From Octopus sinensis (taxonomy: Eukaryota): 64,000 nt of DNA. Every line of letters begins with the position of its first letter. The first letter of the stretch is position 1. This document shows, piece after piece, positions 1,319 to 48,463 of this stretch. Made by a program: the position numbers and the translations under genes. The stretch spans positions 11,904,001 to 11,968,000 of the forward strand of contig NC_043020.1 in assembly GCF_006345805.1 (NCBI RefSeq), given 5' to 3'. The notes below the pieces were generated by a model that was given only the letters and a program-made list of their open reading frames with translations, did no database searches and was not told the origin of the DNA.

Positions 1319-4300
1319 CTAACAAATCACACAAATAGCCAATCTTTTACGCCTTTGAGAATTCTTTGGAACAGCTTTCACACATTTTCGTTTTCGAAAC
1401 TCCATATTCTGTGTCGTATCTTTTTTCATTATTGAACTCGATCTTTTAACCACACTGTCCTTTCGATCTCTCGGTATAGAAAGTGACTTTCGAGCCACAG
1501 GTATTCTACTTTTTGTACTATCACTACCCTCGTATGCATCCGTCCAAGACAGTCTGTTCTTTTTTGGCGTAGTTATCTGTACCTCTTTACTCTTCTTACG
1601 AACATTTTCGTTCTCCTTAATGGGAGATTTCACCGATATTTCGGATTTCAAAGAAGACTTCTTCGGAATGTTTTCAAACAAAACTTCATCTCTTTGAGAA
1701 ATTTCCCCAATCGAAAACCGTATGGTAGACGAACTTCTGTTGAATATATAATCACTGGAACGTGTTTGTGTGCTTTCCCGTCGTACTGGGTTCGGTGGTA
1801 AAATAACACGCGATGATCTTTTTATAGACAAAGGTTTTTCTAAACAGAGTGCATTTCTAAATGATTTTCCTTTTTCCTGCTCTAATTCCCGGCGTCTTTC
1901 GTAAAGAAGCTCATCGAAACAACTTGATCGTCTTGCTGTATAAGGCGACCTGTATAATGACGACTTGGAACGTGATGAAACTATAGTTTCTGATCCCGAG
2001 TAGTTCCCAGATTTTGTTAAAGTGGACGGTTGTCGTCTGAACACGTGTGGTTGTGGTTCATCGGGTGAGGCTTCACCAGTACGTGTAGCAGGTACATAAG
2101 TCTGAACAGATACTTCGCTTACAGTTGGGGATCGTTCATCGGTTTGACAATTCTTTGTTACTCTAGTAATCATCTCAGTTTCCGGTGAAACAGGTATTGT
2201 TAGATCATCCACAGTGACTAATTCTTCAATAGGATAAGAAAGTATGGTTTGGATGGTTTGTTGCTCTAGCACCACATTTAAATATGTCAGAACTGTCTGT
2301 GTGGCTACATTTACTTGTAACATCGGAGTAGTCGTACTCGATATCGGTACTCCTGAGTAAAACGTCTTTAAAGCTAATTCATACTCTTTCTTAATATCAA
2401 ATATTTCATCACCATTTGCAATACCAGCCCAGTGAGCTCTGTTGTCGAGCATCCCATGATATAAAGGCTCCAATTCTTCATGCAGTTCTGACAAAGTTTT
2501 ATAAAGCAGTGTACTCACAAAATCAATAAAACCAACTTGCATTTGTGGTATTTCGCGTATACAATTGCGATCCATTAACGGCAACAGAGGAATATCATAA
2601 GCTCTTTCCATGTCTCCTTGTGTAAAGAATTCCTCAGCCATTAACATGACTGAGAATTTTTGAAAATCCCATGGCTTGGTAATAGCTGTAAGATCAGCTG
2701 CAGTCATTATCATACTAGTTAATAATTCAACGCTTTCTCGAGACTCAAAAGTTTTGTTACCGTCTTCGATGTGTTTTCTAAAAGTGTTTCTTTTCAAAAA
2801 ATAATCTACAAGGTCTGTAGCGAGGATTGCTTTCTCGATAAATTTGAGAGCCTTCTTATATTTTTCAGCTGAAACGTTTTTTAAAATATTTGTATCTTCA
2901 TTTTGCAATATCATGATACTTCGATTTATATGATGGTTTTCCAACACAGACGTATTGTAGAGAGTAGCAAGAGGCGATGCTGTATTCACTTGGAATGCAT
3001 TATTGGTTCCTCTGTGATCAATGTCATGAAACAAGCAAGCTATTAGCAGACATATTAGTTCAAATTCTTTGAAATATACTTGTAATCTACCGGTGGTCAA
3101 CATACAAAACATTGCTTGAGTAACATTGACAGCATGCTGCCAATTATGGTAGGTAAGAGGACGATAGTTTTTTTTCACAGTTAGTATCCATCTATACAAA
3201 GTAAACTTGGATATTTTCAATGAATTTAGAGCGTTCATTTCTATAAAGATAAGAGCAGTCAATATAACCTGTTCGTCTTCTGAGTATAAATAACTAATAA
3301 AATTGTAAGAGTAAAGTTTATAGTGACTTGTTGTGCGAATGTCTTGATGTTGCATGTCATAAGCTTCTTCTTCTTCGCAAGTCGTGTGAAACTGAAGCAA
3401 TTCGTATGCGAAATCTTGGCTGGATGTTATTTTATTGCAACTTTTGTACAAATGGTCGTTATAAATCGCCAGTCCGCAGAAAATGGCAAATGTCTCCAAC
3501 ATATTAATGTCATTTTCACTAAAGGTATTAATCGTCTTCCTGAGAAACATCATATAACCAATTACACTATCGCGATCACCGTGTATTGTCACGCAAATTA
3601 TCCAATTTAGTATATCACCATCCAATGTGATTTTGGTTTTCCATTTGGTTCTATCATGTAAATTAGTCACGCTAACTACATTCACCATGCTAGCACTATT
3701 CATATTTCGTTCAATAAATGATATGAACATTGGGTCTATAGGAGTATTTTTTACTTTAGTGTCTCCCTTCAAAAGTTGTAAAACGTTCGCTGACTCGGTC
3801 AGTTGACGTGCATCGTCTATATCATCACTTAAATAGATGCTGATATTATCACAGTCCAGCATTTTGATGGCGTATTGAAGAATTTCAGATACAAGTCTCT
3901 GGAAATCCTCCCCCGTTTTCAAAAAACACCGACCGAGTTTCAATAACATTTGATGCCGTATTGTTTCTCCTTGGGCAGCTTTAAAGAACTGATCATTGTT
4001 GAGATTCAGAGCACAAATTTTCGAGAAACATTCGAATAAGTTTTCATCACTAGAATCGAAATTATCTCCATCCAATTTATTCAATGCTTTAGCTACTCCT
4101 ATCACACGATCGTTTTTATCGAAAATTGGTAGCGAAAGAATCGATCTAATTTGACAGTTAGTCTCTCTCATATTTTCCGTAAGGCGTGAATCACGCCACG
4201 CTTCTTTAATATTTACTAAACATTCGTTTTCCGCTACGAAACCAACAATTCCTTCGCCAAATGGTAGATGAACCGTGTCTTCTTCTGTATTATCTATTTC

Positions 4301-4428
4301 GCCAGGTTGAGATCTAGTTGAAATATTGTTGGTTTCCGAAATAAGAAATCGATTTTTACCAACTCCTTGGACCAAAAGAAGGCTCGTTGCATGACAACGA
4401 AGCAAAATGCAGGCGTTTTGAAGAATTT
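1319..4428 (-). CDS. Intronless GAF-GAF cyclic-nucleotide phosphodiesterase, PDE5/6/11 class, type A copy 1 (5' end lost in assembly gap)
   Basis: Uninterrupted ORF with GAF-A (LNKLDGDNFDSSDE), GAF-B and catalytic motifs YHNWQH, HDIDHRG, LENHH, ATDL, TAADL..ITKPW, EFFTQGD, MQVGFIDFV; ends KRLAICVIC (CaaX). Near-identical to 22126-25235. Confidence 0.92.
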
Positions 4429-4528
4429 NNNNNNNNNNNNNNNNNNNNNNNNNNNNNNNNNNNNNNNNNNNNNNNNNNNNNNNNNNNNNNNNNNNNNNNN
4501 NNNNNNNNNNNNNNNNNNNNNNNNNNNN
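4429..4528. other. Assembly gap (100 N)
   Basis: Run of exactly 100 N; sequence left of it matches A2 up to ~25235, sequence right of it is unrelated. Confidence 1.
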
Positions 4529-4787
4529 CATTAAAGAGCAACATTAAATCGTTGGAGGGTGTGTGTGAGAGTGTGTGTATGTGTGTGTGAGAGTGTGTGT
4601 GTGAGTGTGTGTATGTGAGAGTGTGTGTATGTATGTGTACGTGTGTGAGAGTGTGTGCATGTCTGTGTGTGAGTGTGTAATTTTAATATTTCTATTATTG
4701 AAAACAAGTGGATGTATTCCACCGTAACTAGGTAAATAGAATCTTCGAACGGAGACGGTCAGTAGCGACACCTGCAGGTCTGACTAC

Positions 4788-4830
4788 GCTGCATTGAGAA
4801 GGGGCAACAACCCTGAAACATGTCTGTAGC
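4788..4830 (+). ncRNA. Minimal type I hammerhead ribozyme motif (U3-A8 variant)
   Basis: GCTGCA-TTGAGAA-GGGG caacaa CCCT-GAAA-CATGT-C-TGTAGC: helix I 6 bp, helix II 4 bp, palindromic helix III ACATGT, GUC cleavage triplet, C3U/G8A covariation. Confidence 0.6.
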
Positions 4831-5062
4831 TGTCGGACTAGCAGGTTGAAGCGGCTGACCTCCCCTGTTCGAAGGTTAATAATGGACGCAGTTTGTGTGT
4901 CAAGTAGCTAGCTTGAGGCGATGGCTTCATGGAGCTAATCAGCGACAGCTTTATTCTTATTTTTAAGAATGCCATATTAGTATGGCGATAACTATTATAT
5001 ATAATATATATATATACATGTATATGTATATACACACATGTATATATATATATATATAATAT

Positions 5063-5117
<55 letters not shown>

Positions 5118-5671: not shown

Positions 5672-8600
5672 CTAGAATATCATGCACATTTTGCTTTTTA
5701 AAACGGTTAGTCTTTGAGGAGGGTTTGGTTTCGCAGTGATTTTCGCGCATTTCCGTTGTCGATTATCGTTGTTCAAATTTGGATTTTTTAACTTCAAGTC
5801 TGCTTGCGGTTTAAAACCTTCAGTGTTTTCATTTCCTTCCGTGCTCTTAGGTTTTTCTGAGAGATTCTCTGGGATTCTGTAAGATTCTGTGTTTCCCTGT
5901 GTTTTTCTGTAAGATTCTGTGTTTCCCTGTGTTTTTCTGTCAGATTCTGTGTTTTTCTGTGTTTTTCTGTCAGATTCTGTGTTTTCCGGTGTGTTTCTGT
6001 CAGATTCTGTGTTTTCCTGTGTTTTTCTGTCAGACGATGCTTTTGAAAAACTTCCCCTTACAGTATATTGAGAACTAATTTCCGAGATGGTTTCGTCTGA
6101 TGTCATGCTTTTGATGCTTTTGTTATATTCGGGTTCTGAAGATGATAGTTTTTGCCGTACTGGTGGTTGAAAAACACGACTTATTCTTTTGAATGGTTGG
6201 GTGGTTCATCAGGTAAGGCATTCAGAGCCTGACTTCCTCGTCGGCTTTGTGATAATTCGCTACGTTTGTTCTCAGCAACTTCATCGATCCAACTAGTTCG
6301 TCTTTGCCGGTTGATTGGAGGCAAAGGCTGAGTTGGTTGTACATGATTACTGTAAGCTTTTCTCCGTAAAGATAACTTATCTTGTCCAATGTTAGATTCT
6401 TCTAGTGTTTCTAAAGATATCACTGGTTGTTCGTGTGGCATTGTAATCGGTAAGTGCTCTGATTCTCTCAAAGAAGGCCTTTCTGTTTGAGTTATTGCCG
6501 AAAACACTTTCAGAAGTCGAGGTTCAGTTTGACTATCCGCTGTTTTTGTCTCAACATTGTTCAAAGATGGTTTGGTAGTTTTTTGTTGACATATATCTAT
6601 TGGGATTGAAATATCAGTCTGAGTAACCTTTTGCTCTTGATTAAATGTGAAAAGAGTTTGGGTCGAAACACCCGTGTCTCCTATATCTTCGACTGTCATA
6701 GCACTATCCAGCGAAATGTTATATAAAACTAATTGGAATTCTCTATCAACATCAAATTTTTCCTCACCATTTGCAATATGAGACCAATGAGCTCTGTTTT
6801 CGAGCATCCCATCGTAAAGAGGTTTTAATTCCTCATGCACCTGATGAAGAAGTTTGTAAAGTAATGTACACACAAAATCAATAAAACCAACTTGCATTTT
6901 GGGCAATTCGTATCTTTTACTGCGATCCATCATAGGCAACACAGGATATTTACATTGGGTTTCTATGTCACCTTGTTCGAAGAATTCGGCTGCGACCATA
7001 ATAGCAGTCTTTCTTTGAACCTCCCATGGCTTAGTAATAGCTGAAAGGTCACACGCAGTCATCATCATGCTAATAAGTAAATCAATGGTTTCTTGAGATG
7101 ACAACGTTTGGTCTTCGACTTCTATTTTGCGTTTGAAAATATTTCTTCTCTCAAAATATACTACGAGATCCGTGGCAATGATTGCTTTCTCGATTAATTT
7201 GAGACCCTTCTGATATTTTTCAGCTGGAACGTTTTTAAAAATATTTGTATCTTCAGTTTTTAATATCCTGATACTTTGATCTATATGATGGTTTTCCAAC
7301 ACAGACGTACTGTAAAGAGTAGCAAGAGGAGATGCCGTCTTCACTTGAAATGCATTATTATATCCTCTATGATCAAGATCATGACACAAAGCAGCCACCA
7401 ATAGGCAAATCTGCTCAAATTCTGTGAAATAATTTTGCAATTTGCCAGTAGTCAACATACAAAACATCATTTGAGTAACATTGATAGCATGACGCCAATT
7501 ATGATAGATGACAGGTCGATAGTTCTTTTTAACAGTTAGTATCCACCTATATAATAATTCTTTAGATATGTTGAGAACGGGCAATGTTTTGGCATCTAAA
7601 AATATGCGAACGACCAACAAAACAGTGTCATCCTCTGAATATATGAAGTCATTGAAATCGAATCGATAAATTTGGTAAAAACCTGAAGATAGTACCTCCA
7701 TACTTAAAAAATTATCTACAATTTCTGGATAACAAGTAATATAGTAGCTAAGTACTTTGTTTGTAAATTCTAGCTGTTCCAGCATATTTGATGCAGTTTC
7801 ATAAAGACGGCAATTATAGATAGCTAAACCGCAGAACATTGCAAATATTTCCATCATGCTGATATCATTTTGACTAAAAATATCCTTTGAATCTTTGATG
7901 TATACGATCCAACCAAGAAAATTCTTACCGGCATCTCTAATAGCTAAACAAAGCAACTGACTCTCAATCTTATATTCGAGATTTACGCTGTCAGACTCAG
8001 TAAGGTTCCCCGAAAGAAATAAATCGAAAGTATTTCCGCTGTTAATATTTTGTTCAATTGCTTTCTTTACTTTAGGTGTTATAATTTGTTCTGAGATATC
8101 TGAAGCTCCTTTCAATAAGTGAAAAACTTTGGAAGAATCAGTTGGGCAAAGGTTATCCTTTTTCGGATCAATCAAATAAATGCTGATACTCTCACACTGT
8201 AACATTTCCATGGCGAGTTTGGTAATTTCGGACATTAGTTTCGGTAGAGAATTTTGATATTTTAGTATACATCGATTCAGTCTTAGTAATAACTTGTGTT
8301 GTGTGAATTCCTCAAATGATCTTCGCAAGAAAGTATTGCTTCTTATACTAATGGCACAAAAGGACAAAAAACTCTCGCAGATCATTTGGTCTTCAGCATC
8401 AAAATAGAGATTATCTCTTTTATTTATTATTTGAGCGACAGCTAACAACTATCATCAGTGTCTAGAATTGGCATGCATAGAATGCTTTTGGTACGATGTC
8501 CAATTTTTTCGTCGACTTCACTTAAGAAACGAGGATCCTGATACACATCCTTAATATTTAAGAGATACTTATTATCAGCTACAAATCCTGCAATACCTTT

Positions 8601-9080
8601 TCCGAAGGGAATGCGTAGTGCGTTTTCTTCAGTATGAAGTGATTGTTCAAGAGTAGAGTCAGATGTAATATCAAACAGGGTCGACATTAGATATTGAACT
8701 TTTCCAACTCCTCGAACCATAAAAAGATTTGCTCTTTCACTGTGAAGTAAGATACATAAATTCTGAAGAACTTTATGACAGACAAAGTGTATATGAATCT
8801 CGGAATTAAGAACTTTCAATATTTCTTTGTACTTTTCATTTGTAGTAAGAGATTCGGCTTGGTTTCTTCGGGAAAGTTTCTTATGAAACACTATGTTTTG
8901 TAAGAAGTCTATAAAGGAATCTACTGCTTCTTCCTTTAATTTTTGATTGTATAATTCTTCCCCCAAGTCACCCAGTCCTCGCCTAGAGAGCCATGATCTA
9001 ACGAATACTGGATTCTTCGACAAGAAATCATCCACATCTTCTTCAGTAAGTCCTGCTTTCTCAGTAAATTTTGTTGCCAT
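5672..9080 (-). CDS. Intronless GAF-GAF phosphodiesterase type B copy 1 (~1136 aa after correcting two 1-bp deletions)
   Basis: ORF pieces 8442-9104, 6181-8448 and 5672-6106 join when compared with intact B2: AAA->AA near 8450 and TTT->TT near 6205. First ATG at 9080 (track start 9104 is TTG). YHNWRH, HDLDH, TACD, MQVGFIDFV intact; ends KSKMCMIF. Confidence 0.88.
5882..6031 (-). repeat. Coding 30-bp tandem repeat, 5 units (DRKTQENTES-like) in B1 tail
   Basis: Units such as GACAGAAAAACACAGGAAAACACAGAATCT, in frame. Confidence 0.9.
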
Positions 9081-9248: not shown

Positions 9249-9276
9249 TGACGCCGAATAATCTGTTGTGACGTAA
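9249..9276. promoter_or_regulatory. CRE-like pair upstream of B1 (TGACGCCG at 9249, TGACGTAA at 9269)
   Basis: TGACGTAA lies 189 bp upstream of the ATG; the same site is at 44797-44804 in B2. Confidence 0.45.
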
Positions 9277-9531
9277 GCAAAATTATGACAAAATATTCAA
9301 AATCGTCAAACGATCGAGTTGTAGATGACACACCTGCATAATTTGCCCTTGGCTTTATTAGTCTAAGACAAAACGATCCTCACTATGAATCATATTATGT
9401 TCTGTGTAGTTGATAATAATCAAATCGAAAGTACAGTTGATGCTGGATCGAACCAAACACACTACGAAGAACGTGAATACATTGTTGCTGGAATTTGGTT
9501 CAATTCTCCACAGTATCTGAAACTTCCCCGC

Positions 9532-11983
<2,452 letters not shown>

Positions 11984-12654: not shown

Positions 12655-15600
12655 TTATGAAATCTTACACACATACTTTTCCATAAAATCGTCCTGCCTT
12701 TTGGTTCTCTTGCTTGTAAGAACTGGTTTACTCCGTGGAATTTTCTTTAAACATTTTCTTCTTCGACCTTGATTGAGGTCTTTCACTGCAACATTAGAAA
12801 TTTTTTCTCTTTCTTCTGCACTCATTGTAAATCTTTCCATGTCTAGCGTCTGTTTAGAGATCACAGGTCTCAAAGCTCTCATCTTTTGTTCAGGCGTTTC
12901 AAATGTTACACAAGCAGCTGTCCAGCTACCTATGTCTGACGAACAACCCATCGCTTCTTGTTCTGCTCCATCGAGATTCATACTTGTAGGGAATTTATTT
13001 GTTTTTAACCATGAGTCTGAAAATGTTTTGGGTGGTTCAAGGGACATGGCTCTACTAAGAAATCCAGGTTGGCTACAGAACTCACTATCACCATTTGAAA
13101 ATTTCACTTGCGTCCCTATATTAATTTTTCGGATTCTTTTACCGATTGGCCTTACCGTTACTGCGAGAAGTTTTTCCGCATAAAAACTTTTTATGGCGTT
13201 CGTTAAAGCACGAGATTCGGAGTAAGACATTGTAGACAAATCATCATCCGTTTGAGATGTCTTTTGACGTAGTCGTTGACTTTCTTCAGCGAGAACAAAA
13301 GTAGTCTGAGTAGACGATGTTGCCATTCCTAACGCAACATTTTCAGAGTGAATCCGTGATATTTTAGGTGTTACAATTTTGTGATATTTTGCTCCTTTCA
13401 AACTCATTTCTTCATTATAAAGAGTCTCAATTTCGGAATCAATGTCAAAAAACTCGATGCCTTCAGCTATATGGGCCCAGTGATTTCGATTCTCCAATGC
13501 CCCTTCATACAGATGAGTCAGATTAGCATCCATTTCAGATAAAACTTGAAAAATCGGAACACATTGAGTATCAAAATACTTCACTTCCATTTCAGGAAAT
13601 TTGTATCTATTTTCACGATCCATGAGATCTTCGACATCTTTCTGTAAAGTTTTTTCTTGATCCCCCTGCTCGAAAAATTCAGCTGCAATCTTAACTGCAG
13701 CATTTCTTTCAAACGACCATGGCTTTGTAGTAGCTGAAAGATCACAGGCTGCCATTATAACGGTTATTAATAAATCAATGCTTTCTTGACACTGAAAACC
13801 TTTGTCGCCCTTTTTGATTTCCTCTCTAAAACTTTTAATTACTTCATTAAGATCTTTTACATCTGTGCCAAGAATCGCTTTCTCGATAAATTTAAGACCG
13901 TGCTGATAATTTTCAGCCGAGAGATTCTGGAATATATTGGTTTCGGCGGTGTTTAACATCCTGATAGCTCTATCTATATGATGGTGTTCCAAGACGGACG
14001 TATCGTATAATGTAGTGAGCGGAGATGATATCTTCACTTGAAATTTATTATTTGTCCCTCTGTGGTCAAGATCATGCAATAAAGAAGCAATAAGGGAACA
14101 AATCTGTTCAAATTCTGTGAAATAATATTGTATTCGTGAACAGGTCAAAAAATAAAACATCATTTGAAATACCAGTACACCGTGGCGCCAGTTATGGAAA
14201 ATATTTGGGCGATAATTCTTCTTTGCTGTTAAAATAAACCTGTATAAAATATCAATCGGTAAATTTAATATGGTCAAAGCATTTTTATCAAGAAACACAC
14301 GAGCACACAACGAAACAATTTCATCATCTGTAAATACAGATTCAATAAAGGCATAGGAATATAATTGATACTCTTCAGCGGATCGTGGCTCGACTTTTAA
14401 GAAAGGTTCGATAAGTTTCCGGTCGCATGTGGTATGAAATGCCAGCACATCGTTCATTACTTCTCCCTGTGCCAACATCCTAACAGAACGTTCATATATG
14501 CGACAATTATGAATACTGATTCCACAAATCAATGCAAACGTCTCCATTAGGTTGATGTCACTTTGGTCGAAAACATCTTTGGAATGTCTTTCAAATATTA
14601 TGCAACCGACGACCTCACTTGTAGCATTTGTTATTGTCATACACAGTAGCCAACGGCCGACATCACCTTCAACAGTGATTAACCTCTCTTTTGATTCACC
14701 TTGTAATCGAATTATATCGATTATATTGATACTTTTTAAATTTCGGCCAATTGGTATTATATATTTCGGATCTAACGGAACTTCCTCCACTTCTTCTTCA
14801 TCTTTTAATAACTGGAAAACGTTAGACGATATCGTCGGAGAGGCCGCATCCATTCTGTTTTCTGTCAAACAAACAGAAATCTTGCTACAGTCTAACATAT
14901 CCATGGCATGTCGAAGAATTTCTGATATAAGCTTTCGAAAATTGATTTGCTCTTTCAGAACAAATTTGACAAGTTTTAGCAATAACTTGTGGCGTTTAAA
15001 TTCCACTTGTGATATTTCTAACAACCGTTCGTTGATTATACTGATTCCGCAAAACGACAAAAAGTTCTGAAATATAATTTCATCATTCGAATCGAAATAA
15101 CGATCATGTTTCTTATTCAATGCTTGAGCTACACCTATTACGACGTCATCTCTATCCTTAATTGGTACAGATAGAATACTTTTCGTACAGAACCCCGTTG
15201 ATTTATCAATCTCATGTAAAAAACGTTCGTCTTCGTAGGCATCTTTAATGTTCAATAGACAACTGTATTCAGCTACATATCCGACAATTCCTTTCCGAAA
15301 GGAATGCGAATGGCATTTTCTTCGTTGTGAATTGTATCCTCCATAACCGAGGTGGCTGTAACGTCAAAGAGCTTGGAAACTAAGTGTAGCTTTTTAGCAG
15401 TTCCATGTAACAGAAATAGGCTCGCTCTCTCACAATCGAGGATGATACAAGCATTTTGAAGAATTTTATGACACTGTTTGTCGACATTGACTTCGAAAAC
15501 AGTGTCTTTTACAAACTCTCTGTATATTTCATTCTCTGTCACTACTGAACTATACCCTCTTGATTTTGATTTCACCTCCTGTAATACTGTATCACTTGTA

Positions 15601-15758
15601 GTTGCACTATAACCGGTCTCTCCCGGTACTTTCAACGTGCATTTAAGGCTTTGCCTTTTGACGTCCACTGTAAAATGCCGAGATTGCCATTTGCGAACGA
15701 AATCTGGATTATTCTGTAAGAAATTTTCAACCTCATCTTGCTGTAAATCATCCATCAT
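12655..15758 (-). CDS. Intronless GAF-GAF phosphodiesterase type C (~1034 aa after correcting one 1-bp deletion), atypical active site
   Basis: 15273-15758 and 12655-15255 join at IPFG-KGIVG (GGAAAAGGA read as GGAAAGGA near 15297). ATG at 15758 is preceded by an in-frame TAA. Metal ligands HNWRH, HDLDH, AACD retained; invariant Q replaced (MEVKYFD); ends KYVCKIS. Confidence 0.88.
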
Positions 15759-15969: not shown

Positions 15970-15997
15970 TGACGTCAATCTCTAATGTATGACATCA
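15970..15997. promoter_or_regulatory. Perfect CRE (TGACGTCA, 15970-15977) plus TGACATCA 20 bp away, upstream of PDE C
   Basis: Palindromic octamer 212 bp upstream of the ATG. Confidence 0.55.
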
Positions 15998-25235: not shown

Positions 25236-25534
25236 TTTTAGTAACTCTCGTTGAATTAATGTCTGACTGAACCACTTTGAGTGTATCTCTGAACAAATTC
25301 ATCTTACTAACAGGTAACTCTGGTTCCTCAACCAAATTCTCAAGATATTCAGTTGGATCTTGTTTGGGAGACAGTTTAACCCCAAAATTTTAGGGCAGCT
25401 TTTGATAAAATCTTATGTTTCGAAAAATCGGGTGCTATTTCTTCCATGCCGTGTTCTGAAAGCCATTTATCAACGAATTCTGGGTTGTCATGAAGGAAAT
25501 CTCTTATGTCTTCTTCTGTCAGACCTGTAGACAT
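22126..25534 (-). CDS. Intronless GAF-GAF phosphodiesterase type A copy 2 (~1135 aa including N-terminus hidden by a 1-bp insertion)
   Basis: The track ORF starts at TTG 25335, but ATG 25534 encodes MSTGLTEEDIRDFLHDNPEFVDKWL (family N-terminal motif) and joins after removing one base in AAAATTTTGGGG (25380-25391). Catalytic motifs intact; ends KRLVICVVC. Confidence 0.9.
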
Positions 25535-26002: not shown

Positions 26003-26027
26003 TGATATCAACCTAACTATGACGTAA
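26003..26027. promoter_or_regulatory. CRE-like pair upstream of A2 (TGATATCA at 26003, TGACGTAA at 26020)
   Basis: ~470-490 bp upstream of ATG 25534, of which ~200 bp is an intervening microsatellite. Confidence 0.35.
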
Positions 26028-26565: not shown

Positions 26566-26859
26566 GCTATTGTTGTTGTTGGTCTTGATTGAGCAGACCA
26601 ATATTCAAGGCGTCCCGGAAATGATTATCCTGGTTTTTTTCTTCTTTTTTGTTTGGTATATCTCGGACTTTGTTACATCACGTGTCCTTTTCCGTAAATC
26701 ATTGAAGTGTGATTTGGGGAGTATTTGATCTGCTATTTCTAGCAAGTCGAGCTAACACAGTGAGGCTTCCTTGCTACGTCATTCAGTAGTGCGTGTGTAT
26801 ACGTATGTGTATGTGTAGGCATGTATGATTGTAAGTATGTGTCACTGTATATATATTCA

Positions 26860-26965
<106 letters not shown>

Positions 26966-26988
26966 CCTATCTACCTATCTATCTATCT

Positions 26989-33233: not shown

Positions 33234-33241
33234 TGACGTCA
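33234..33241. promoter_or_regulatory. Perfect CRE (TGACGTCA) upstream of PDE D
   Basis: 228 bp upstream of ATG 33469. Confidence 0.55.
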
Positions 33242-33468: not shown

Positions 33469-36400
33469 ATGGTGGACCCTATTTGCGCAGACGACGTGGA
33501 AAAGTTTTTAGAAGAAAATCCAGAATTCACTAAAAACTGGATTTCTAAAAACAATGCTAATACTTCTGAAGAGAAAGTTGTTGTGGTTCCGTCTTTAAGA
33601 CATTCATTTATAGATTGCGTTAAAATGATTATTTCTCGAAACAGCAGCATTGGTGTAAACAAGAAAACGGTATTAACCGCAAAGGACACTTACAGAGAAA
33701 TCATGAAGGAATTGGTTTCCGAGCTTAATGAAGATAAATTGTGTTATGCAATTCTTCAGAACACGTGTATTTTGCTCCAGTGTAGTAGCGCGAGTATTTA
33801 TTTGGCTCGAGGTACCGGAAAGACGCGTTATCTTTTATCTAAATACGTCGACGTGACCGCTACTTCTGACAGAAATGAAACCCTTCGTTCAGAACCCGAT
33901 ACCATTTGTATACCATTCGGTGAAGGAATCTTGGGTTATGTAGCTGAAAGTAAGCGTTCTTTGAACATCAAAGATGTCACTCGGTCTCATTATTCTTTAA
34001 GTGATGACAAATCGATTGGACTTCAAGTCCAAAGTATTTTTTGTATGCCGATTCTAAATAAAAACGATAATGTAATGGGTGTTGTTAATGTCCAGAACAG
34101 CAAAGAAAATACTAATTTTTCTTTAGAAGATGAAACATTATTTGAGAACTTATTATCCGTTTGTGGAATCAGTATAGATAATGCTCATTTGCTTCAAGTT
34201 TGTCTTGAAGAATTTAAACGCCACCAGTTATTACTAAAGCTCACGAACTGCATTTTGAAGGAACAGAACAATCTACCAAAGCTTATTTCTCAAATTTTGC
34301 ACCATGCCATGGCGCTGATTGAGAGTAGTAATATCAGCATCTATTTAACTGACAGTAACAAAGAAACAGTTGGTCCAAATATGAATTCTAAAGTGTTTCA
34401 ATTATTGAGAGAAGAGAAAGAAGCAAAAGAAGTGACAATAGATAGGAAATTTATAAAACCTGTTGAAAATAATTTGAAGAGTGAAAATGTATTCGATGTT
34501 TTCAATTTAAAATGTTCTTCTGAAATCTCGCTTCCAAATCTCAAAAACAGCGAAAGGTGGTTACTTGTTATGCCAATAAAAGATTCCACGGGAAACGCTA
34601 TTGGTTCTATTATGTTTGTCAGGGATTCGGTGGACAATTTCAGTGAAAATGATATCAATATGATGAAAGTATTTACAACATATTGCGGTTTGAGTATCTT
34701 CAACTGTCGTTTGTACGAGAGTTCAGCTAAGTCGGTGTCTCGGGCGAAAATAATCAATGATATTATTGCCTACCACGTGACGTGTGATCAAAAAACAATC
34801 GATCGTTTTCTATCAATGGAAATGAAATCTTCAGAACACTATCAAATATACAATTTTCACTTCGATGATTCATTATACACAGATGGTGATACTGTTTTAA
34901 TATGTGCCCGGTTGCTTTTAAATCTTGATGTTGTAAATGTTCTGAATATATCTATGGCTTATTTGTATAGGTTTATTGTAACAGTGAAAGACAACTATCG
35001 TCCACTTACCTACCATAACTGGCGCCATGTTTTAAACGTTACACAATCAATGTTCTGTATGTTGACTACAGGTAAATTACAGACTTACTACACGAAATTC
35101 CAAATGATTTGTTTATTAATTGCTTGTTTGCTTCATGATCTTGAGCACAGAGGGCAGAATAATTCGTTCCAAGTGAGAGTAGCATCTTCGCTTGCTACAT
35201 TGTACAGTACGTCTTTCCTAGAGCACCGTCATATAAGTCGAAGCATGATGCTATTGAACAAATCCGGAACTGATATCTTTAAAAATCTTCCGGTTGAAAA
35301 GTATCGAGAGGGTTTCAGACTAATAGAGAAAGCAATCCTTGCCACGGATCTCAGGAACCATTTTGAGAATAGGAGCATTTTTAAACATGAAATACAAAGT
35401 GATCACAGAACGTTTGATTCTCTTGAAAGTATTGATTTACTAATTGGCATGATGATGACTGCAGCTGATCTGTCGGTTGCGACTAAGCCATGGGAAATTC
35501 AAAGAAAGACCGCCATCAAAGTCATATCTGAATACTTCGATCAAGGAGAGCCGGGTAAAGCTTTAAAATCTTATGTGTTTCCTTTGGTGGATCGCGAGAA
35601 AAAATATGAAATAACTAAGGCACAAGTTGATTTTATTGATTTTGTGTGTATGCCGATTTATAAACTTTTGGTAAAGTTAGAAACGCGTTTGAGACCATTA
35701 TATGACGGGTGCATCGCAAACGGAACGCGCTGGCGTCTTATTGCTGCTGATAAAGAAAAGTTTAATATCGATGAAGAATTAAATTTTGTTTCACATCAGA
35801 GATTAAGAGTTAACCAACCAAAACAGTACCAAGAATTCCGAAGTAGCTCAATGGATATTCAAAATCGAAATAACAAGATTTTAGAACCAATATTAGATGA
35901 ATTTCGATCACCTATAGCATTAAATTTAATTACAGAACATAATCCCTCCCTATGGTGTCATTCACAACCATTGTTAGTGCCTAAACTAAACAAGCTTACT
36001 AAGTTAAAATCACCAATTTCTGCTTGTTCATGGCAAGAAAACATTGTGAAGTTAACTATGGCTGTGCCTCATAAAAAAGTTGAAATAAATGAGAAATCTT
36101 GTCAGACAGACATGCAAATCGTTAAATTACACCCCGGAAACACCGTACAAATATATAATCCCAAAGGTAAACTTACTTCAGAAGGTCCGATGAAAGTTAG
36201 TCTTCCAGTTAAAACAACTTATTCAACCACAGTTCATTCAGATATCAATGAATCTACGACTGGCAAACGCTCGAATAGCATTGCTAAATCTATGCAACGT
36301 CGAAATTATATCCCGACATTGGCTCTTTCACCGAATTCACTGGGAACACCAATAGGCGTGAAAACACTCATAAAACATACTAATTCGACTCGCCTTTTTG

Positions 36401-36630
36401 ATAATGTTAAACACGTCGTCACCGATGATATTTGTAGAGTTTCTGAAAAACTAAACGGGAAAATACGGCGAAATCTGACTGTAAATGAATATAATGAGGT
36501 TCCTACTGTAGAATATGACTTTACACCAAATATTAATCAGTTTCGAAGGCGAAAATGTTTGAAGAAAATTCCCATTAATATGAAGGACGAGCAAGTTATT
36601 TTGAAGAGTTATTTGTGTGTGATTTCATAA
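33469..36630 (+). CDS. Intronless GAF-GAF phosphodiesterase type D (1053 aa, intact ORF)
   Basis: MVDPICADDVEKFLEENPEF; YHNWRH, HDLEH, ATDL, TAADL..TKPW, AQVDFIDFV; ends RRRKCLKKIP...KSYLCVIS. Confidence 0.95.
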   Translation: MVDPICADDVEKFLEENPEFTKNWISKNNANTSEEKVVVVPSLRHSFIDCVKMIISRNSSIGVNKKTVLTAKDTYREIMKELVSELNEDKLCYAILQNTCILLQCSSASIYLARGTGKTRYLLSKYVDVTATSDRNETLRSEPDTICIPFGEGILGYVAESKRSLNIKDVTRSHYSLSDDKSIGLQVQSIFCMPILNKNDNVMGVVNVQNSKENTNFSLEDETLFENLLSVCGISIDNAHLLQVCLEEFKRHQLLLKLTNCILKEQNNLPKLISQILHHAMALIESSNISIYLTDSNKETVGPNMNSKVFQLLREEKEAKEVTIDRKFIKPVENNLKSENVFDVFNLKCSSEISLPNLKNSERWLLVMPIKDSTGNAIGSIMFVRDSVDNFSENDINMMKVFTTYCGLSIFNCRLYESSAKSVSRAKIINDIIAYHVTCDQKTIDRFLSMEMKSSEHYQIYNFHFDDSLYTDGDTVLICARLLLNLDVVNVLNISMAYLYRFIVTVKDNYRPLTYHNWRHVLNVTQSMFCMLTTGKLQTYYTKFQMICLLIACLLHDLEHRGQNNSFQVRVASSLATLYSTSFLEHRHISRSMMLLNKSGTDIFKNLPVEKYREGFRLIEKAILATDLRNHFENRSIFKHEIQSDHRTFDSLESIDLLIGMMMTAADLSVATKPWEIQRKTAIKVISEYFDQGEPGKALKSYVFPLVDREKKYEITKAQVDFIDFVCMPIYKLLVKLETRLRPLYDGCIANGTRWRLIAADKEKFNIDEELNFVSHQRLRVNQPKQYQEFRSSSMDIQNRNNKILEPILDEFRSPIALNLITEHNPSLWCHSQPLLVPKLNKLTKLKSPISACSWQENIVKLTMAVPHKKVEINEKSCQTDMQIVKLHPGNTVQIYNPKGKLTSEGPMKVSLPVKTTYSTTVHSDINESTTGKRSNSIAKSMQRRNYIPTLALSPNSLGTPIGVKTLIKHTNSTRLFDNVKHVVTDDICRVSEKLNGKIRRNLTVNEYNEVPTVEYDFTPNINQFRRRKCLKKIPINMKDEQVILKSYLCVIS

Positions 36631-44541: not shown

Positions 44542-44992
44542 GCGGGGAAGTTCCAGATACTGTGGAGAATTGAACCAAATTCCAGCAACAATGTATTCAC
44601 GTTCTTCGTAGTGTGTTTGGTTCGATCCAGCATCAACTGTACTTTCGATTTGATTATTATCAACAACACAGAACATAATATGATTCAGAGTGAGGATCGT
44701 TTTGTCTTAGACTAATAAAGCCAAGGGCAAATTATGCAGGTGTGTCATCTACAACTCGATCGTTTGACGATTTTGAATATTTTGTCATAATTTTACTTAC
44801 GTCACAACAGATTATTCGGCGTCATTTCGAAGACAAACCACGAAAGCATGTCTGCTGCCTGCTTCTAATTTCAAGTAGCGAAGACTACTGATTTAAAATA
44901 AAATCAAGAAATACAGAAATTTTCATGAAACGTTTTCTAGAATACTTAGAAGCATCATTGTACCTTGTTTGGAAATTAAACTTAAAAGAAAC

Positions 44993-47900
44993 ATGGAAAC
45001 AAAATTTACTGAGAAAGCAGGACTTACTGAAGAAGATGTGGATGATTTCTTGTCGAAGAATCCAGAATTCGTTAGATCATGGCTCTCTAGGCGAGGACTG
45101 GGTGACTTGGGGGAAGATTTATACAATCAAAAATTAAAGGAAGAAGCAGTAGATTCCTTTATAGGTTTTGTACAAAACATTTTCATTCATAAGAAACTTT
45201 CCCGAAGATACCAAGCCGAATCTCTTACTACAAATGAAAAGTACAAAGAAATATTGAAAGTTCTTAATTCCGAGATTCATATACACTTTGTCTGTCATAA
45301 AGTTCTTCAGAATTTATGTATCTTACTTCACAGTGAAAGAGCAAATCTTTTTATGGTTCGAGGAGTTGGAAAAGTTCAATATCTAATGTCGACCCTGTTT
45401 GATATTACACCTGACTCTACTCTTGAACAATCACTTCATACTGAAGAAAACGCACTACGCATTCCCTTCGGAAAAGGTATTTCAGGATTTGTAGCTCAAA
45501 ATAGATGTCTATTAAATATTAAGGATGTGTATCAGGATCCTCGTTTCTTAAGTGAAGTCGACGAAAAAATTGGACATCGTACCAAAAGCATTCTATGCAT
45601 GCCAATTCTAGACAATGATGATAGTTTGTTAGCTGTCGCTCAAATAATAAATAAAAGAGATAATCTCTATTTTGATGCTGAAGACCAAATGATCTGCGAG
45701 AGTTTTTTGTCCTTTTGTGCCATTAGTATAAGAAGCAATACTTTCTTGCGAAGATCATTTGAGGAATTCACACAACACAAGTTATTACTAAGACTGAATC
45801 GATGTATACTAAAATATCAAAATTCTCTACCGAAACTAATGTCCGAAATTACCAAACTCGCCATGGAAATGTTACAGTGTGAGAGTATCAGCATTTATTT
45901 GATTGATCCGAAAAAGGATAACCTTTGCCCAACTGATTCTTCCAAAGTTTTTCACTTATTGAAAGGAGCTTCAGATATCTCAGAACAAATTATAACACCT
46001 AAAGTAAAGAAAGCAATTGAACAAAATATTAACAGCGGAAATACTTTCGATTTATTTCTTTCGGGGAACCTTACTGAGTCTGACAGCGTAAATCTCGAAT
46101 ATAAGATTGAGAGTCAGTTGCTTTGTTTAGCTATTAGAGATGCCGGTAAGAATTTTCTTGGTTGGATCGTATACATCAAAGATTCAAGGGATATTTTTAG
46201 TCAAAATGATATCAGCATGATGGAAATATTTGCAATGTTCTGCGGTTTAGCTATCTATAATTGCCGTCTTTATGAAACTGCATCAAATATGCTGGAACAG
46301 CTAGAATTTACAAACAAAGTACTTAGCTACTATATTACTTGTTATCCAGAAATTGTAGATAATTTTTTAAGTATGGAGGTACTATCTTCAGGTTTTTACC
46401 AAATTTATCGATTCGATTTCAATGACTTCATATATTCAGAGGATGACACTGTTTTGTTGGTCGTTCGCATATTTTTAGATGCCAAAACATTGCCCGTTCT
46501 CAACATATCTAAAGAATTATTATATAGGTGGATACTAACTGTTAAAAAGAACTATCGACCTGTCATCTATCATAATTGGCGTCATGCTATCAATGTTACT
46601 CAAATGATGTTTTGTATGTTGACTACTGGCAAATTGCAAAATTATTTCACAGAATTTGAGCAGATTTGCCTATTGGTGGCTGCTTTGTGTCATGATCTTG
46701 ATCATAGAGGATATAATAATGCATTTCAAGTGAAGACGGCATCTCCTCTTGCTACTCTTTACAGTACCTCTGTGTTGGAAAATCATCATATAGATCGAAG
46801 TATCAGGATATTAAAAACTGAAGATACAAATATTTTTAAAAACGTTCCAGCTGAAAAATATCAGAAGGGTCTCAAATTAATCGAGAAAGCAATCATTGCT
46901 ACGGATCTCGTAGTATATTTTGAGAAAAAAAATATTTTCAAACGCAAAATAGAAGTCGAAGACCAAACGTTGTCATCTCAAGAAACCATTGATTTACTTA
47001 TTAGCATGATGATGACTGCGTGTGACCTTTCAGCTATTACTAAGCCATGGGAGGTTCAAAGAAAGACTGCTATTATGGTCGCAGCCGAATTCTTCGAACA
47101 AGGTGACATAGAAACCAAATGTAAATATTTTGTGTTGCCTATGATGGATCGCAGTAAAAGATACGAATTGCCCAAAATGCAAGTTGGTTTTATTGATTTT
47201 GTGTGTACATTACTTTACAAACTTCTTCATCAGGTGCATGAGGAATTAAAACCTCTTTACGATGGGATGCTCGAAAACAGAGCTCATTGGTCTCATATTG
47301 CAAATGGTGAGGAAGAATTTGATGTTGATAGAGAGTTCCAATTAGTTTTACATAACATTTCGCTGGATAGTGCTATGACAGTCGGAGATATAGGAGACAC
47401 GGGTGTTTCGACCCAAACTCTTTTCACATTTAATCAAGAGCAAAAGGTTACTCAGACTGATATTTCAATCCCAATAGATATATGTCAACAAAAAACTACC
47501 AAACCATCTTTGAACAATGTTGAGACAAAAACAGCGGATAGTCAAACTGAACCTCGACTTCTGAAAGTGTCTTCGGCAATAACTCAAACAGAAAGGCCTT
47601 CTTTGAGAGAATCAGAGCACTTACCGATTACAATGCCACACGAACAACCAGTGATATCTTTAGAAACACTAGAAGAATCTAACATTGGACAAGATAAGTT
47701 ATCTTTACGGAGAAAAGCTTACAGTAATCATGCACAACCAACTCAGCCTTTGCCTCCAATCAACCGGCAAAGACGAACTAGTTGGATCGATGAAGTTGCT
47801 GAGAACAAACGTAGCGAATTATCACAAAGCCGACGAGGAAGTCAGGCTCTGAATGCCTTACCTGATGAAACCACCCAACCATTCAAAAGAATAAGTCGTG

Positions 47901-48463
47901 TTTTTCAACCACCAGTACGGCAAAAACTATCATCTTCAGAACCCGAATATAACAAAAGCATCAAAAGCATGACATCAGACGAAACCATCTCGGAAATTAG
48001 TTCTCAATATACTGTAAGGGGAAGTTTTTCAAAAGCATCGTTTGACAGAAAAACACAGGAAAACACAGAATCTGACAGAAACACACAGGAAAACCCAGAA
48101 TCTGACAGAAAAACACAGAAAAACACAGAATCTGACAGAAAAACACAGGGAAACACAGAATCTGACAGAAAAACACAGGGAAACAGAGAATCTTACAGAA
48201 AAACACAGGAAAACACAGAATCTGACAGAAAAACACAGGGAAACACAGAATCTTACAGAATCCCAGAGAATCTCTCAGAAAAACCTAAGAGCACGGAAGG
48301 AAATGAAAACACTGAAGGTTTTAAACCGCAAGCAGACTTGAAGTTAAAAAATCCAAATTTGAACAACGATAATCGACAACGGAAATGCGCGAAAATCACT
48401 GCGAAACCAAACCCTCCTCAAAGACTAACCGTTTTAAAAAGCAAAATGTGCATGATATTCTAG
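44993..48463 (+). CDS. Intronless GAF-GAF phosphodiesterase type B copy 2 (1156 aa, intact ORF)
   Basis: ATG at 44993 (track start 44969 is TTG); GLTEEDVDDFLSKNPEF, LFDI, DPRF, YHNWRH, HDLDH, TACD, LPKMQVGFIDFVC; ends KSKMCMIF. Confidence 0.96.
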   Translation: METKFTEKAGLTEEDVDDFLSKNPEFVRSWLSRRGLGDLGEDLYNQKLKEEAVDSFIGFVQNIFIHKKLSRRYQAESLTTNEKYKEILKVLNSEIHIHFVCHKVLQNLCILLHSERANLFMVRGVGKVQYLMSTLFDITPDSTLEQSLHTEENALRIPFGKGISGFVAQNRCLLNIKDVYQDPRFLSEVDEKIGHRTKSILCMPILDNDDSLLAVAQIINKRDNLYFDAEDQMICESFLSFCAISIRSNTFLRRSFEEFTQHKLLLRLNRCILKYQNSLPKLMSEITKLAMEMLQCESISIYLIDPKKDNLCPTDSSKVFHLLKGASDISEQIITPKVKKAIEQNINSGNTFDLFLSGNLTESDSVNLEYKIESQLLCLAIRDAGKNFLGWIVYIKDSRDIFSQNDISMMEIFAMFCGLAIYNCRLYETASNMLEQLEFTNKVLSYYITCYPEIVDNFLSMEVLSSGFYQIYRFDFNDFIYSEDDTVLLVVRIFLDAKTLPVLNISKELLYRWILTVKKNYRPVIYHNWRHAINVTQMMFCMLTTGKLQNYFTEFEQICLLVAALCHDLDHRGYNNAFQVKTASPLATLYSTSVLENHHIDRSIRILKTEDTNIFKNVPAEKYQKGLKLIEKAIIATDLVVYFEKKNIFKRKIEVEDQTLSSQETIDLLISMMMTACDLSAITKPWEVQRKTAIMVAAEFFEQGDIETKCKYFVLPMMDRSKRYELPKMQVGFIDFVCTLLYKLLHQVHEELKPLYDGMLENRAHWSHIANGEEEFDVDREFQLVLHNISLDSAMTVGDIGDTGVSTQTLFTFNQEQKVTQTDISIPIDICQQKTTKPSLNNVETKTADSQTEPRLLKVSSAITQTERPSLRESEHLPITMPHEQPVISLETLEESNIGQDKLSLRRKAYSNHAQPTQPLPPINRQRRTSWIDEVAENKRSELSQSRRGSQALNALPDETTQPFKRISRVFQPPVRQKLSSSEPEYNKSIKSMTSDETISEISSQYTVRGSFSKASFDRKTQENTESDRNTQENPESDRKTQKNTESDRKTQGNTESDRKTQGNRESYRKTQENTESDRKTQGNTESYRIPENLSEKPKSTEGNENTEGFKPQADLKLKNPNLNNDNRQRKCAKITAKPNPPQRLTVLKSKMCMIF
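48044..48253 (+). repeat. Coding 30-bp tandem repeat, 7 units, in B2 tail
   Basis: DRKTQENTES-like x7 versus x5 in B1. Confidence 0.92.

What the first reader, a model, noticed from the sequence alone, without database searches (positions are those of the whole stretch)
1319..48463. Tandem cluster of six intronless, PDE6-like GAF-GAF phosphodiesterases in four divergent types
Seen: six ~3.1-3.5 kb single-exon reading frames (A1, B1, C, A2 on -, D and B2 on +), each with N-terminal FLxxNP(E/D)F, two GAF domains, an HD catalytic domain and a CaaX end. Established: animal PDE5/6/11 genes are normally multi-exon and low-copy; the N-terminal motif (PDE6A AEEVEKFLDSN, PDE6B FLDQNPDF), LPKxQVGFIDFVC and C-terminal prenylation are PDE6-like traits. 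Inference: one processed retrocopy of the invertebrate PDE5/6 gene founded a lineage-specific family that then diversified strongly. Cephalopod eyes use Gq/PLC rhabdomeric phototransduction, so this would be a cGMP-control system used elsewhere (sperm/testis is my leading guess).
Basis: partly seen in the sequence, partly recalled or inferred. Interest (0 to 1): 0.9.

Follow-up and report, generated by a model that had tools for sequence, protein, structure and literature searches.

The report
Octopus intronless PDE5/6 gene cluster

Summary
Confirmed in substance. The window (Octopus sinensis, C24:11.904-11.968 Mb) carries six GAF-GAF-PDEase loci of four types (A, B, C, D), 37-48% identical to each other. 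Only D and B2 are uninterrupted ORFs. A1 loses its first 298 coding bases at the assembly gap, which is not a continuous join. A2, B1 and C each carry single-base indels in short homopolymers.

The six are part of a ~175-kb cluster of 15 assembled copies. Some of those may be haplotig artefacts. O. vulgaris has the same six genes in the same order; O. bimaculoides shows the D-B-A part of it; Argonauta hians shares the B-A pair. Every copy checked is single-exon, whereas a bivalve PDE5/6 gene has at least 14 exons over 42 kb.

Trees place the family as one clade (100/100) sister to canonical mollusc PDE5/6 (95/97), apart from PDE11. No clear intron-bearing PDE5/6 parent was found in the genome. 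Metal ligands are kept in all types; type C has lost the substrate-reading glutamine. The tails are disordered and end in CaaX. A CRE-like octamer sits upstream of every copy. Evolution is fast (dN/dS 0.46-0.72). Testis use remains a guess with one weak literature hint.

The parts
1319..4428 (-). A1: type-A PDE gene, from coding base 299 to the stop (ends CVIC). The 5' end is lost in the assembly gap.
   Evidence: 0.32% different from A4 and missing the first 298 nt of the CDS. tblastn 99.6% to A2.
4429..4528 (.). Assembly gap (100 N). It is a scaffold join, not a small hole. A1's 5' end and the B-to-A spacer are missing.
   Evidence: The spacer is 9.2 kb in O. vulgaris.
5672..9080 (-). B1: type-B PDE gene, read in three frames because of two 1-nt deletions (about 8449 and about 6207). 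Ends CMIF.
   Evidence: 0.82% different from the intact O. vulgaris B (CAI9740194).
9269..9276 (-). CRE-like octamer TTACGTCA, about 190 nt upstream of the B1 start codon.
9477..11570 (+). LINE-type reverse-transcriptase fragment lying between B1 and C.
   Evidence: Pfam RVT_1, E 1.2e-28.
12655..15758 (-). C: type-C PDE gene with one 1-nt deletion at about 15296. The substrate-reading glutamine is replaced (MEVKYFD). Ends CKIS.
   Evidence: The same deletion occurs in the 99.3% twin copy outside the window.
15970..15977 (-). CRE octamer TGACGTCA, about 212-219 nt upstream of the C start codon.
22126..25534 (-). A2: type-A PDE gene. The ATG is at 25534 (MSTGLTEEDIRDFLHDNPEF). A 1-nt insertion at about 25379 shifts the frame. 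Ends CVVC.
26020..26027 (-). CRE-like octamer TTACGTCA, about 485 nt upstream of the A2 start codon. The flank CATAG is shared with Argonauta.
26764..29447 (+). Degraded LINE fragments (RT and zf-RVT) between A2 and D.
33234..33241 (+). CRE octamer TGACGTCA, 235 nt upstream of the D start codon.
33469..36630 (+). D: intact type-D PDE gene, 1053 aa. It has GAF-A, GAF-B and a catalytic domain, a disordered tail (residues 815-1053) and a CVIS end.
   Evidence: 88% identical to the single-ORF O. bimaculoides D.
44797..44804 (+). CRE-like octamer TTACGTCA, 196 nt upstream of the B2 start codon.
44993..48463 (+). B2: intact type-B PDE gene, 1156 aa, ending CMIF.
48043..48260 (+). 30-nt coding tandem repeat (TESDRKTQxN, 7.3 copies) in the B2 tail, two units longer than in B1 and O. 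vulgaris B.
56030..59123 (+). LINE element (endonuclease plus reverse-transcriptase ORFs) downstream of B2.
   Evidence: Pfam Exo_endo_phos and RVT_1.

Best explanation
The six loci belong to an octopod family of intron-free PDE5/6-clade genes.

WHAT EACH GENE ENCODES. Each encodes an N-terminal helix (FLxxNPxF), a GAF-A domain (regulatory, with the cGMP-binding type of motif), a GAF-B domain and a class-I HD phosphodiesterase domain. A 230-400-residue disordered tail follows, ending in a basic stretch and a CaaX box. The predicted product is a prenylated, membrane-tethered enzyme that probably hydrolyses cGMP.

ORIGIN. The family descends from the molluscan PDE5/6 gene after loss of all coding introns. 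The simplest route is a reverse-transcribed copy. It then grew by DNA-level tandem and inverted duplication that carried a short promoter with a CRE-like element, and the copies diverged quickly. The intron-bearing gene seems to have been replaced. Most types should still be active enzymes. Type C has a remodelled substrate pocket and may be inactive or have a changed specificity.

SHOWN: domain content, clade placement, absence of coding introns, the cluster and its conservation across species, the promoter motif, and the evolutionary rates.

INFERRED: the retro-copy route, prenylation, cGMP as substrate, CREB/ATF-type control, and the tissue of use.
For: - DOMAINS. Pfam finds GAF x2 and PDEase_I. 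The best solved relatives are PDE5A at 440 bits and PDE6 at 400 bits.
- STRUCTURE. The AlphaFold model of D is confident in the three domains and disordered from residue 815. Foldseek matches full-length PDE6 (TM 0.62-0.68) and the PDE5 catalytic domain (TM 0.90-0.96).
- SINGLE EXON. Gene range equals 3 x aa + 3 in O. bimaculoides, O. vulgaris and Argonauta. An unidentified ENA sample has contiguous ORFs. By contrast, Tegillarca PDE5/6 has at least 14 exons over 42 kb and octopus PDE11 is read exon by exon over about 290 kb.
- TREES. The family is one clade (100/100), sister to mollusc PDE5/6 (95/97), with PDE11 apart (100/99).
- CaaX. The 'KS..Caax' end is shared with the PDE5/6 clade and absent from PDE11 and PDE10-like proteins.
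- CLUSTER. There are 15 copies on C24 at 11.905-12.082 Mb. O. vulgaris has the same gene order, O. bimaculoides has D-B-A and Argonauta has B-A.
- CATALYTIC RESIDUES. Metal ligands are kept in A, B, B', C', D and F.
- SELECTION. dN/dS is below 1 in the structured core: D 0.46, B 0.67. ORFs of 1,050-1,156 codons remain open at dS 0.09-0.16.
- PROMOTER MOTIF. In 224 kb there are 21 T[GT]ACGTCA sites, and 14 of them lie within 620 nt upstream of the 14 start codons that have upstream sequence. The flanks around the motif are otherwise unalignable between types.
Against: - No retroposition hallmark is left: no poly(A) tract, and target-site duplications were not examined. In-situ intron loss cannot be excluded.
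- A multi-exon GAF-PDE at C17:48.96-49.11 Mb could not be classified. It is 43-56% identical to chiton PDE5/6, 37-68% to chiton PDE11 and 34-54% to the family. It could be a divergent parent.
- dN/dS is high (0.58-0.72 overall; about 1 in the D tail, 0.83 in the B tail).
- Three of the six window copies have frame breaks, so some copies may be dying.
- The tree contains no vertebrate PDE5 or PDE6 rows. The clade's name rests on source annotations and on similarity to solved structures.
- No enzyme or prenylation data exist, and there is no expression evidence that can be assigned to these genes.
Confidence: 0.72

Rival explanations
1. Much of the copy number is an assembly artefact. Near-identical copies would be alternative haplotypes or mis-scaffolded contigs, and the frame breaks would be uncorrected long-read indel errors.
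For: - Window 4529-27049 is a 99.3% inverted copy of DNA 67-90 kb to the right, and both arms start exactly at assembly gaps. A further 18.7-kb block is a 99.0% direct copy.
- O. vulgaris has 10-11 gene models against 15 copies here. The extra block matches the mirrored arm.
- All frame breaks are 1-nt indels in runs of 2-3 identical bases.
- RefSeq flags one B model as LOW QUALITY PROTEIN.
Against: - The six genes inside the window match six O. vulgaris genes one to one, in the same order and orientation. A x2 and B x2 within the window are therefore real.
- O. vulgaris has three distinct A proteins.
- The four types are 37-48% identical and cannot be alleles.
- The C deletion and one B deletion are shared by both twin copies, so they are not random errors.
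Confidence: 0.45
2. The cluster is a graveyard: retro-derived copies that are decaying and have no present function.
For: - dN/dS is 0.58-0.72. The tails evolve near neutrality.
- Three of the six window copies have frame breaks.
- A3 has lost its CaaX box.
- Type C has lost the invariant glutamine, and one ENA member has lost metal ligands.
- A degraded copy lies on C8845.
Against: - Every type has at least one intact ORF of 1,026-1,156 codons in each Octopus species examined. A and B also have intact ORFs in Argonauta, despite deep divergence.
- Core dN/dS is below 1.
- Metal ligands and the CaaX box are conserved.
- The CRE-like motif is kept while its flanks have diverged.
- No other PDE5/6 gene was found that could do the job.
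Confidence: 0.1
3. An intron-bearing PDE5/6 parent still exists, and the cluster is an added, testis- or sperm-specific retrogene family.
For: - An unclassified multi-exon GAF-PDE lies on C17.
- A 'cGMP-specific PDE-like' gene is testis-biased in O. sinensis: FPKM 13.9 against 0 in ovary (PMC11202624).
- Intronless genes with CRE-bearing short promoters are typical of mammalian spermatid genes. This point is from my own knowledge and is an analogy only.
Against: - The C17 exons are no closer to the family or to chiton PDE5/6 than PDE11 is.
- The family itself sits at the position expected for the cephalopod PDE5/6 orthologue.
- No cephalopod protein falls in the canonical mollusc clade in three large searches.
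- The testis-biased gene could not be mapped to a locus.
Confidence: 0.2

Closest known systems
[quoted passage not shown]
   Same: - The architecture is the same: FLxxNPxF helix, GAF-A, GAF-B, HD catalytic domain, C-terminal extension and a 'KS..Caax' prenylation end.
- They fall in the same clade in the trees.
   Different: - The canonical genes are multi-exon (at least 14 exons over 42 kb in Tegillarca) and occur as one or two canonical PDE5/6 types per species in my sample (two in Patella and Haliotis). The octopod genes are single-exon and number 10-15 in one cluster.
- The octopod proteins have a long stem branch (0.65 substitutions per site) and are 35-41% identical to chiton PDE5/6.
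- Their tails are much longer.
Vertebrate PDE5A and PDE6 (rod alpha/beta, cone alpha')
   Same: - These are the best solved relatives by sequence (440 and about 400 bits) and by fold.
- PDE6 also ends in CaaX.
   Different: - There is no evidence for a P-gamma-type inhibitory partner or for a role in vision.
- Nothing here places the octopod proteins nearer to PDE6 than to PDE5. The PDE5/PDE6 split is a vertebrate matter (my own knowledge).
- The vertebrate genes are multi-exon.
PDE11 (present in the same genome at C3:13.58-13.87 Mb)
   Same: The GAF-GAF-catalytic architecture, at 34-40% identity.
   Different: - It forms a separate clade (100/99).
- It has no CaaX end.
- It is multi-exon over about 290 kb.
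- It evolves slowly: 95.5% identical between O. sinensis and O. bimaculoides, against 78-92% for the family.
Retrogene-founded, tandemly amplified gene families, and octopus tandem expansions such as protocadherins and C2H2 zinc fingers (own knowledge)
   Same: Lineage-specific clusters of near-identical and divergent copies interspersed with LINEs, with fast evolution.
   Different: - Here the amplified gene is a core second-messenger enzyme.
- The intron-bearing original seems to be gone.
- I found no published description of it in the held library.

Membership tests
Class I cyclic-nucleotide phosphodiesterase (Pfam PF00233) | A PDEase_I domain scoring above the curated cut-off. | tested here: met
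   228-285 bits against a cut-off of 24.8 for all six loci.
Class I cyclic-nucleotide phosphodiesterase (Pfam PF00233) | The metal-binding H/D residues: YHNWxH, HDxxH, E..H and the TKPW-loop D. | tested here: met
   Kept in A, B, B', C, C', D and F. Lost only in one member from the ENA sample.
Class I cyclic-nucleotide phosphodiesterase (Pfam PF00233) | The invariant purine-reading glutamine (Q817 of PDE5). | tested here: inconclusive
   Kept in A, B, B', C', D and F. Replaced by E in type C, together with F>Y at the clamp position.
PDE5/6 clade of GAF-PDEs | Tandem GAF-A and GAF-B domains N-terminal to the catalytic domain. | tested here: met
   Pfam GAF, two stretches. The AlphaFold model shows two GAF folds. 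Full-length PDE6 is the best fold match.
PDE5/6 clade of GAF-PDEs | Branches with PDE5/6-type proteins rather than with PDE11, PDE10 or PDE2. | tested here: met
   The PDE5/6 clade including the family has 100/98-99 support. The family is sister to the mollusc PDE5/6 proteins at 95/97. Limitation: no vertebrate rows and no PDE2 rows in the tree.
PDE5/6 clade of GAF-PDEs | A C-terminal CaaX prenylation box. | tested here: met
   All six window genes end in CaaX, as does nearly every PDE5/6-clade row from cnidarians to deuterostomes. No PDE11 or PDE10-like row does. Prenylation itself was not tested.
PDE5/6 clade of GAF-PDEs | The GAF-A NKFDE signature for cGMP binding. | tested here: inconclusive
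   Intact in A, C, C', B' and F. D has NS in place of NK. B2 has DQ in place of DE.
PDE5/6 clade of GAF-PDEs | cGMP-selective hydrolysis. | not testable with these tools
   This needs recombinant enzyme assays.
Vertebrate PDE6 proper | Inhibition by a P-gamma subunit and a role in transducin-coupled phototransduction. | not tested
   No search for a P-gamma-like gene was made. From my own knowledge, P-gamma is a vertebrate novelty.
Processed retrogene | The coding region lacks the introns of its relatives. | tested here: met
Processed retrogene | An identifiable intron-bearing parent elsewhere in the genome. | tested here: not met
   Six-frame searches with chiton PDE5/6, its GAF-A domain, chiton PDE11 and a family member found only PDE11 (C3), a PDE10-like gene (C7), a PDE2-like gene (C13) and an unclassified C17 gene.
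Processed retrogene | A poly(A) remnant and target-site duplications. | tested here: not met
   No run of nine or more A within 1.5 kb 3' of the stop codons, apart from one 13-A run 950 nt downstream of C, well past its poly(A) signal. This is expected for an old event followed by DNA-level duplication. Target-site duplications were not looked for.

The most novel reading that the evidence does not exclude
Octopods discarded the ancestral multi-exon PDE5/6 gene. They run cGMP breakdown through a retro-derived, CRE-controlled, rapidly diversifying set of membrane-tethered isoenzymes. The set includes variants with a rebuilt substrate pocket (type C) that act as pseudo-enzymes or have a new specificity. 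It would be used in a lineage-specific setting such as sperm signalling.
Probability: 0.2. Interest if true: 0.65.

Novelty: new variant of a known kind. Interest (0 to 1): 0.5.

Why it matters
PDE5/6 is a conserved second-messenger enzyme; in my sample of animals its gene was found in one or two canonical types per species. Here a whole lineage appears to have swapped it for an intron-free copy and multiplied that copy into at least seven divergent, fast-evolving types.

This gives a natural experiment in three things:
- how a core signalling enzyme is sub-functionalised;
- how a retro-derived gene gains and keeps a promoter (the CRE-like element);
- how cGMP signalling is organised in cephalopods, whose eyes do not use it for phototransduction.

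It also matters practically. The region is mis-assembled in the O. sinensis reference, and automatic annotation there (truncated models and a 'LOW QUALITY PROTEIN' flag) under-describes the family.

Tried and rejected
1. PARENT GENE. Four six-frame genome searches turned up only PDE11 (C3), a PDE10-like gene (C7) and a PDE2-like gene (C13). They also found an unclassifiable gene on C17.

2. PDE11 ORIGIN. Rejected by the trees and by the absence of a CaaX end in PDE11.

3. RETROPOSITION HALLMARKS. No poly(A) remnants were found.

4. THE UNNAMED ORGANISMS. I tried to identify the ENA sample ERZ21867824 and the SRA runs SRR11869384/85/91. No paper mentions them. DNA similarity to octopus is confined to the coding sequence for the ENA contigs, and is 88% for the SRA contig, which points to another octopus species.

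5. EXPRESSION EVIDENCE. Exact look-ups of D and B2 in public assemblies found nothing. The testis-biased gene in PMC11202624 carries an in-house identifier that cannot be mapped.

6. PDE6-SPECIFIC MOTIFS.

7. C8845 PSEUDOGENE. I considered it a recent PDE11 retrocopy and rejected that. Its best match is to canonical PDE5/6.

8. FAILED CALLS. The genome search failed twice with B2 as the query.


Full report
SOURCE AND OBSERVATION. The window is C24:11,904,001-11,968,000 of a 2.72-Gb assembly. The organism is therefore O. sinensis.

Pfam finds GAF (mostly two stretches) and PDEase_I in all of them. The best solved relatives of B2 are PDE5A (440 bits) and PDE6 (about 400 bits), well ahead of PDE2 (273) and PDE10 (224). 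An AlphaFold model of D is confident for GAF-A, GAF-B and the catalytic domain, and disordered from residue 815 to the end. Its best fold matches are full-length PDE6 and the PDE5 catalytic domain.

THE GAP. The 1070-aa 'ORF' across 4429-4528 is an artefact.
- Left of the gap, A1 matches A2 and A4 only from coding base 299.
- Right of the gap, the DNA is the 3' flank of B1.
- In O. vulgaris the B-to-A spacer is 9.2 kb. Here it would be about 1.2 kb.

The gap is therefore a scaffold join that hides sequence or is a misjoin. A1's N-terminus and promoter are not in the assembly.

STATE OF THE SIX GENES. Only D (1053 aa) and B2 (1156 aa) are uninterrupted.
- B1 has two 1-nt deletions.
- C has one 1-nt deletion.
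- A2 has one 1-nt insertion.

All of these lie in runs of two or three identical bases, judged against O. vulgaris orthologues or intact twins. The C deletion and one B deletion are shared with 99.3%-identical copies outside the window. The others are private to one copy. In a noisy-long-read assembly of near-identical repeats, these cannot be told apart from errors without reads.

THE CLUSTER IS LARGER. PF00233 finds 15 uninterrupted catalytic domains on C24 between 11.906 and 12.081 Mb. After fetching 224 kb, tblastn resolves this order: A1 B1 C A2 D B2 | A3 A4 C B3 A5 C' (fragment) C C' F. A B' type lies on the unplaced contig C1653.

Self-comparison shows that window 4529-27049 is a 99.3% inverted copy of DNA to the right, and both arms begin at assembly gaps. 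There is also an 18.7-kb direct copy at 99.0%. O. vulgaris has 11 consecutive gene models, CAI9740185-195. Two of them are pieces of one B gene, and CAI9740191 is taken from its position to be D. Its loci show B(split)-D and C-B-A, with room for one A between D and C. That is exactly the six genes of the window, in the same order and orientation. The window's six are therefore corroborated. The extra mirrored block may be a haplotig.

INTRONS. For B in O. bimaculoides, for C and B in O. vulgaris and for the A-like gene in Argonauta, the annotated gene range equals three times the protein length plus a stop codon. O. bimaculoides D and the Argonauta B-like copy were each read as one uninterrupted frame; for O. 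vulgaris D only its 3' end was seen. Two members from an unidentified ENA sample are contiguous ORFs. By contrast, the Tegillarca PDE5/6 gene spans 41.9 kb with at least 14 coding exons. The octopus PDE11 gene is hit exon by exon over about 290 kb.

PHYLOGENY. Careful maximum-likelihood trees give these results (quick version):
- The family, including Argonauta and the ENA members, is one clade (100/100) on a long stem.
- It lies inside the PDE5/6 clade (100/98-99) and is sister to canonical mollusc PDE5/6 (95/97).
- PDE11 is separate (100/99).
- A, B, B', D and F have 1:1 orthologues in O. bimaculoides.
- The Argonauta A-like protein is sister to A (100/99), and the B-like protein is sister to B+B' (100/100).
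- The Argonauta pair lies in the same B-then-A order as in Octopus.

The family therefore predates the Octopus-Argonauta split. The 'KS..Caax' end is shared with PDE5/6 proteins from cnidarians to deuterostomes and is missing in PDE11 and PDE10-like proteins.

THE PARENT. Six-frame searches of the genome with chiton PDE5/6, its GAF-A domain, chiton PDE11 and a family member found these loci (naming):
- PDE11 on C3;
- a PDE10-like gene on C7;
- a PDE2-like gene on C13;
- one multi-exon GAF-PDE on C17 that is no closer to PDE5/6 or to the family than PDE11 is.

No cephalopod protein falls among canonical mollusc PDE5/6 in three large searches. The family thus looks like the octopod PDE5/6 itself. 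A degraded intron-free copy on C8845 matches canonical PDE5/6 best.

FUNCTION-RELATED FEATURES.
- Metal ligands are kept in all window types. The glutamine switch is kept in A, B and D.
- Type C has Q>E and F>Y in the substrate clamp.
- D and B2 deviate in the GAF-A NKFDE motif.
- dN/dS between O. sinensis and O. bimaculoides is 0.58 for D (core 0.46, tail 0.97) and 0.72 for B (core 0.67).
- Protein identity between the two species is 78-92% for the family, against 95.5% for PDE11.

These values point to fast evolution, but the long ORFs kept over deep divergence argue for function.

PROMOTER MOTIF. TGACGTCA or TTACGTCA lies at a type-specific distance upstream of every start codon: C/C' about -210, D -235, B -196, A about -490, F about -410. 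It is also present in O. vulgaris, O. bimaculoides, Argonauta, another octopus species and one ENA member. Of 21 sites in 224 kb, 14 lie in the 3.9% of the DNA just upstream of the genes, while the sequence around the motif is not alignable between types. This indicates DNA-level duplication with the promoter included, and probable control by a CREB/ATF-type factor. The latter is an inference.

LITERATURE. No paper in the held library describes the cluster. One gonad transcriptome study lists a testis-biased 'cGMP-specific PDE-like' gene in O. sinensis (PMC11202624), but it cannot be mapped to a locus.

VERDICT. This is a real, octopod-wide, intron-free and expanded PDE5/6 family. It is wrong on scope and age, and probably wrong on the survival of a parent gene. 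The tissue role remains open.

Noticed in passing
window 9269-9276, 15970-15977, 26020-26027, 33234-33241, 44797-44804: A CRE-like octamer T[GT]ACGTCA lies upstream of every PDE copy. Fourteen of the 21 sites in 224 kb fall within 620 nt of a start codon. The motif is conserved in O. vulgaris, O. bimaculoides, Argonauta and other relatives, while its flanks have diverged.
   Followed up: yes
window 4529-27049, against C24:11,975,869-11,998,446 (outside the window): A 22.5-kb inverted duplicate at 99.3% identity, with both arms starting exactly at 100-N assembly gaps. A further 18.7-kb direct duplicate is 99.0% identical. This is either a possible haplotig or mis-scaffold, or a real young palindrome.
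   Followed up: partly
window 12655-15758 (type C); also C24:12,047,368-12,050,445: Type C replaces the invariant substrate-reading glutamine and the phenylalanine clamp (MQVGFID becomes MEVKYFD) while keeping all metal ligands. It may be a pseudo-enzyme or have a changed specificity.
   Followed up: partly
window 48043-48260: A 30-nt coding tandem repeat (TESDRKTQxN) in the B tail varies in copy number. B2 has 60 nt more than B1, B3 and O. vulgaris B.
   Followed up: partly
window 9477-11570, 26764-29447, 56030-59123: LINE-type elements (reverse transcriptase, zf-RVT, endonuclease) of higher G+C content lie between the PDE genes. Long (TCTA)n, (GT)n and (TA)n microsatellites produce spurious 'SIYLSIYL' ORFs.
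   Followed up: partly
G000:C8845:81,217-83,650 (L026): A degraded intron-free GAF-PDE copy with many stop codons. Its best match is canonical mollusc PDE5/6, not the octopus PDE11 gene or the living cluster. It may be a fossil of an early copy.
   Followed up: partly
G000:C17:48,955,016-49,112,075: A multi-exon GAF-PDE gene of unclear family. It is 43-56% identical to chiton PDE5/6, 37-68% to chiton PDE11 and 34-54% to the cluster. I could not fetch its DNA.
   Followed up: partly
L002 10355-13822 and L052 10001-13768 (ENA ERZ21867824, organism unknown): Two further intron-free family members on separate contigs, branching near type F. One has lost catalytic residues (HDLDYEG, EHQV, and M in place of Q) but keeps a CaaX end (CSII).
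   Followed up: partly
L056 1329-3959 and 10001-13018 (Argonauta hians BAAFZT010000077.1): An intron-free B-like and A-like pair in the same order as in Octopus. The A-like copy is extremely divergent (end branch 1.54 substitutions per site).
   Followed up: yes
C24:11,969,031-11,972,441 (copy A3, outside the window): A 14-nt deletion at the very 3' end removes the CaaX box, so the protein ends ...RLLFV.
   Followed up: no
C24:11,893,645-11,896,004 (L036/L037, minus strand): Two similar ORFs upstream of the cluster. By eye they look like first exons of a sugar or inositol transporter-type membrane protein. Neither was searched.
   Followed up: no
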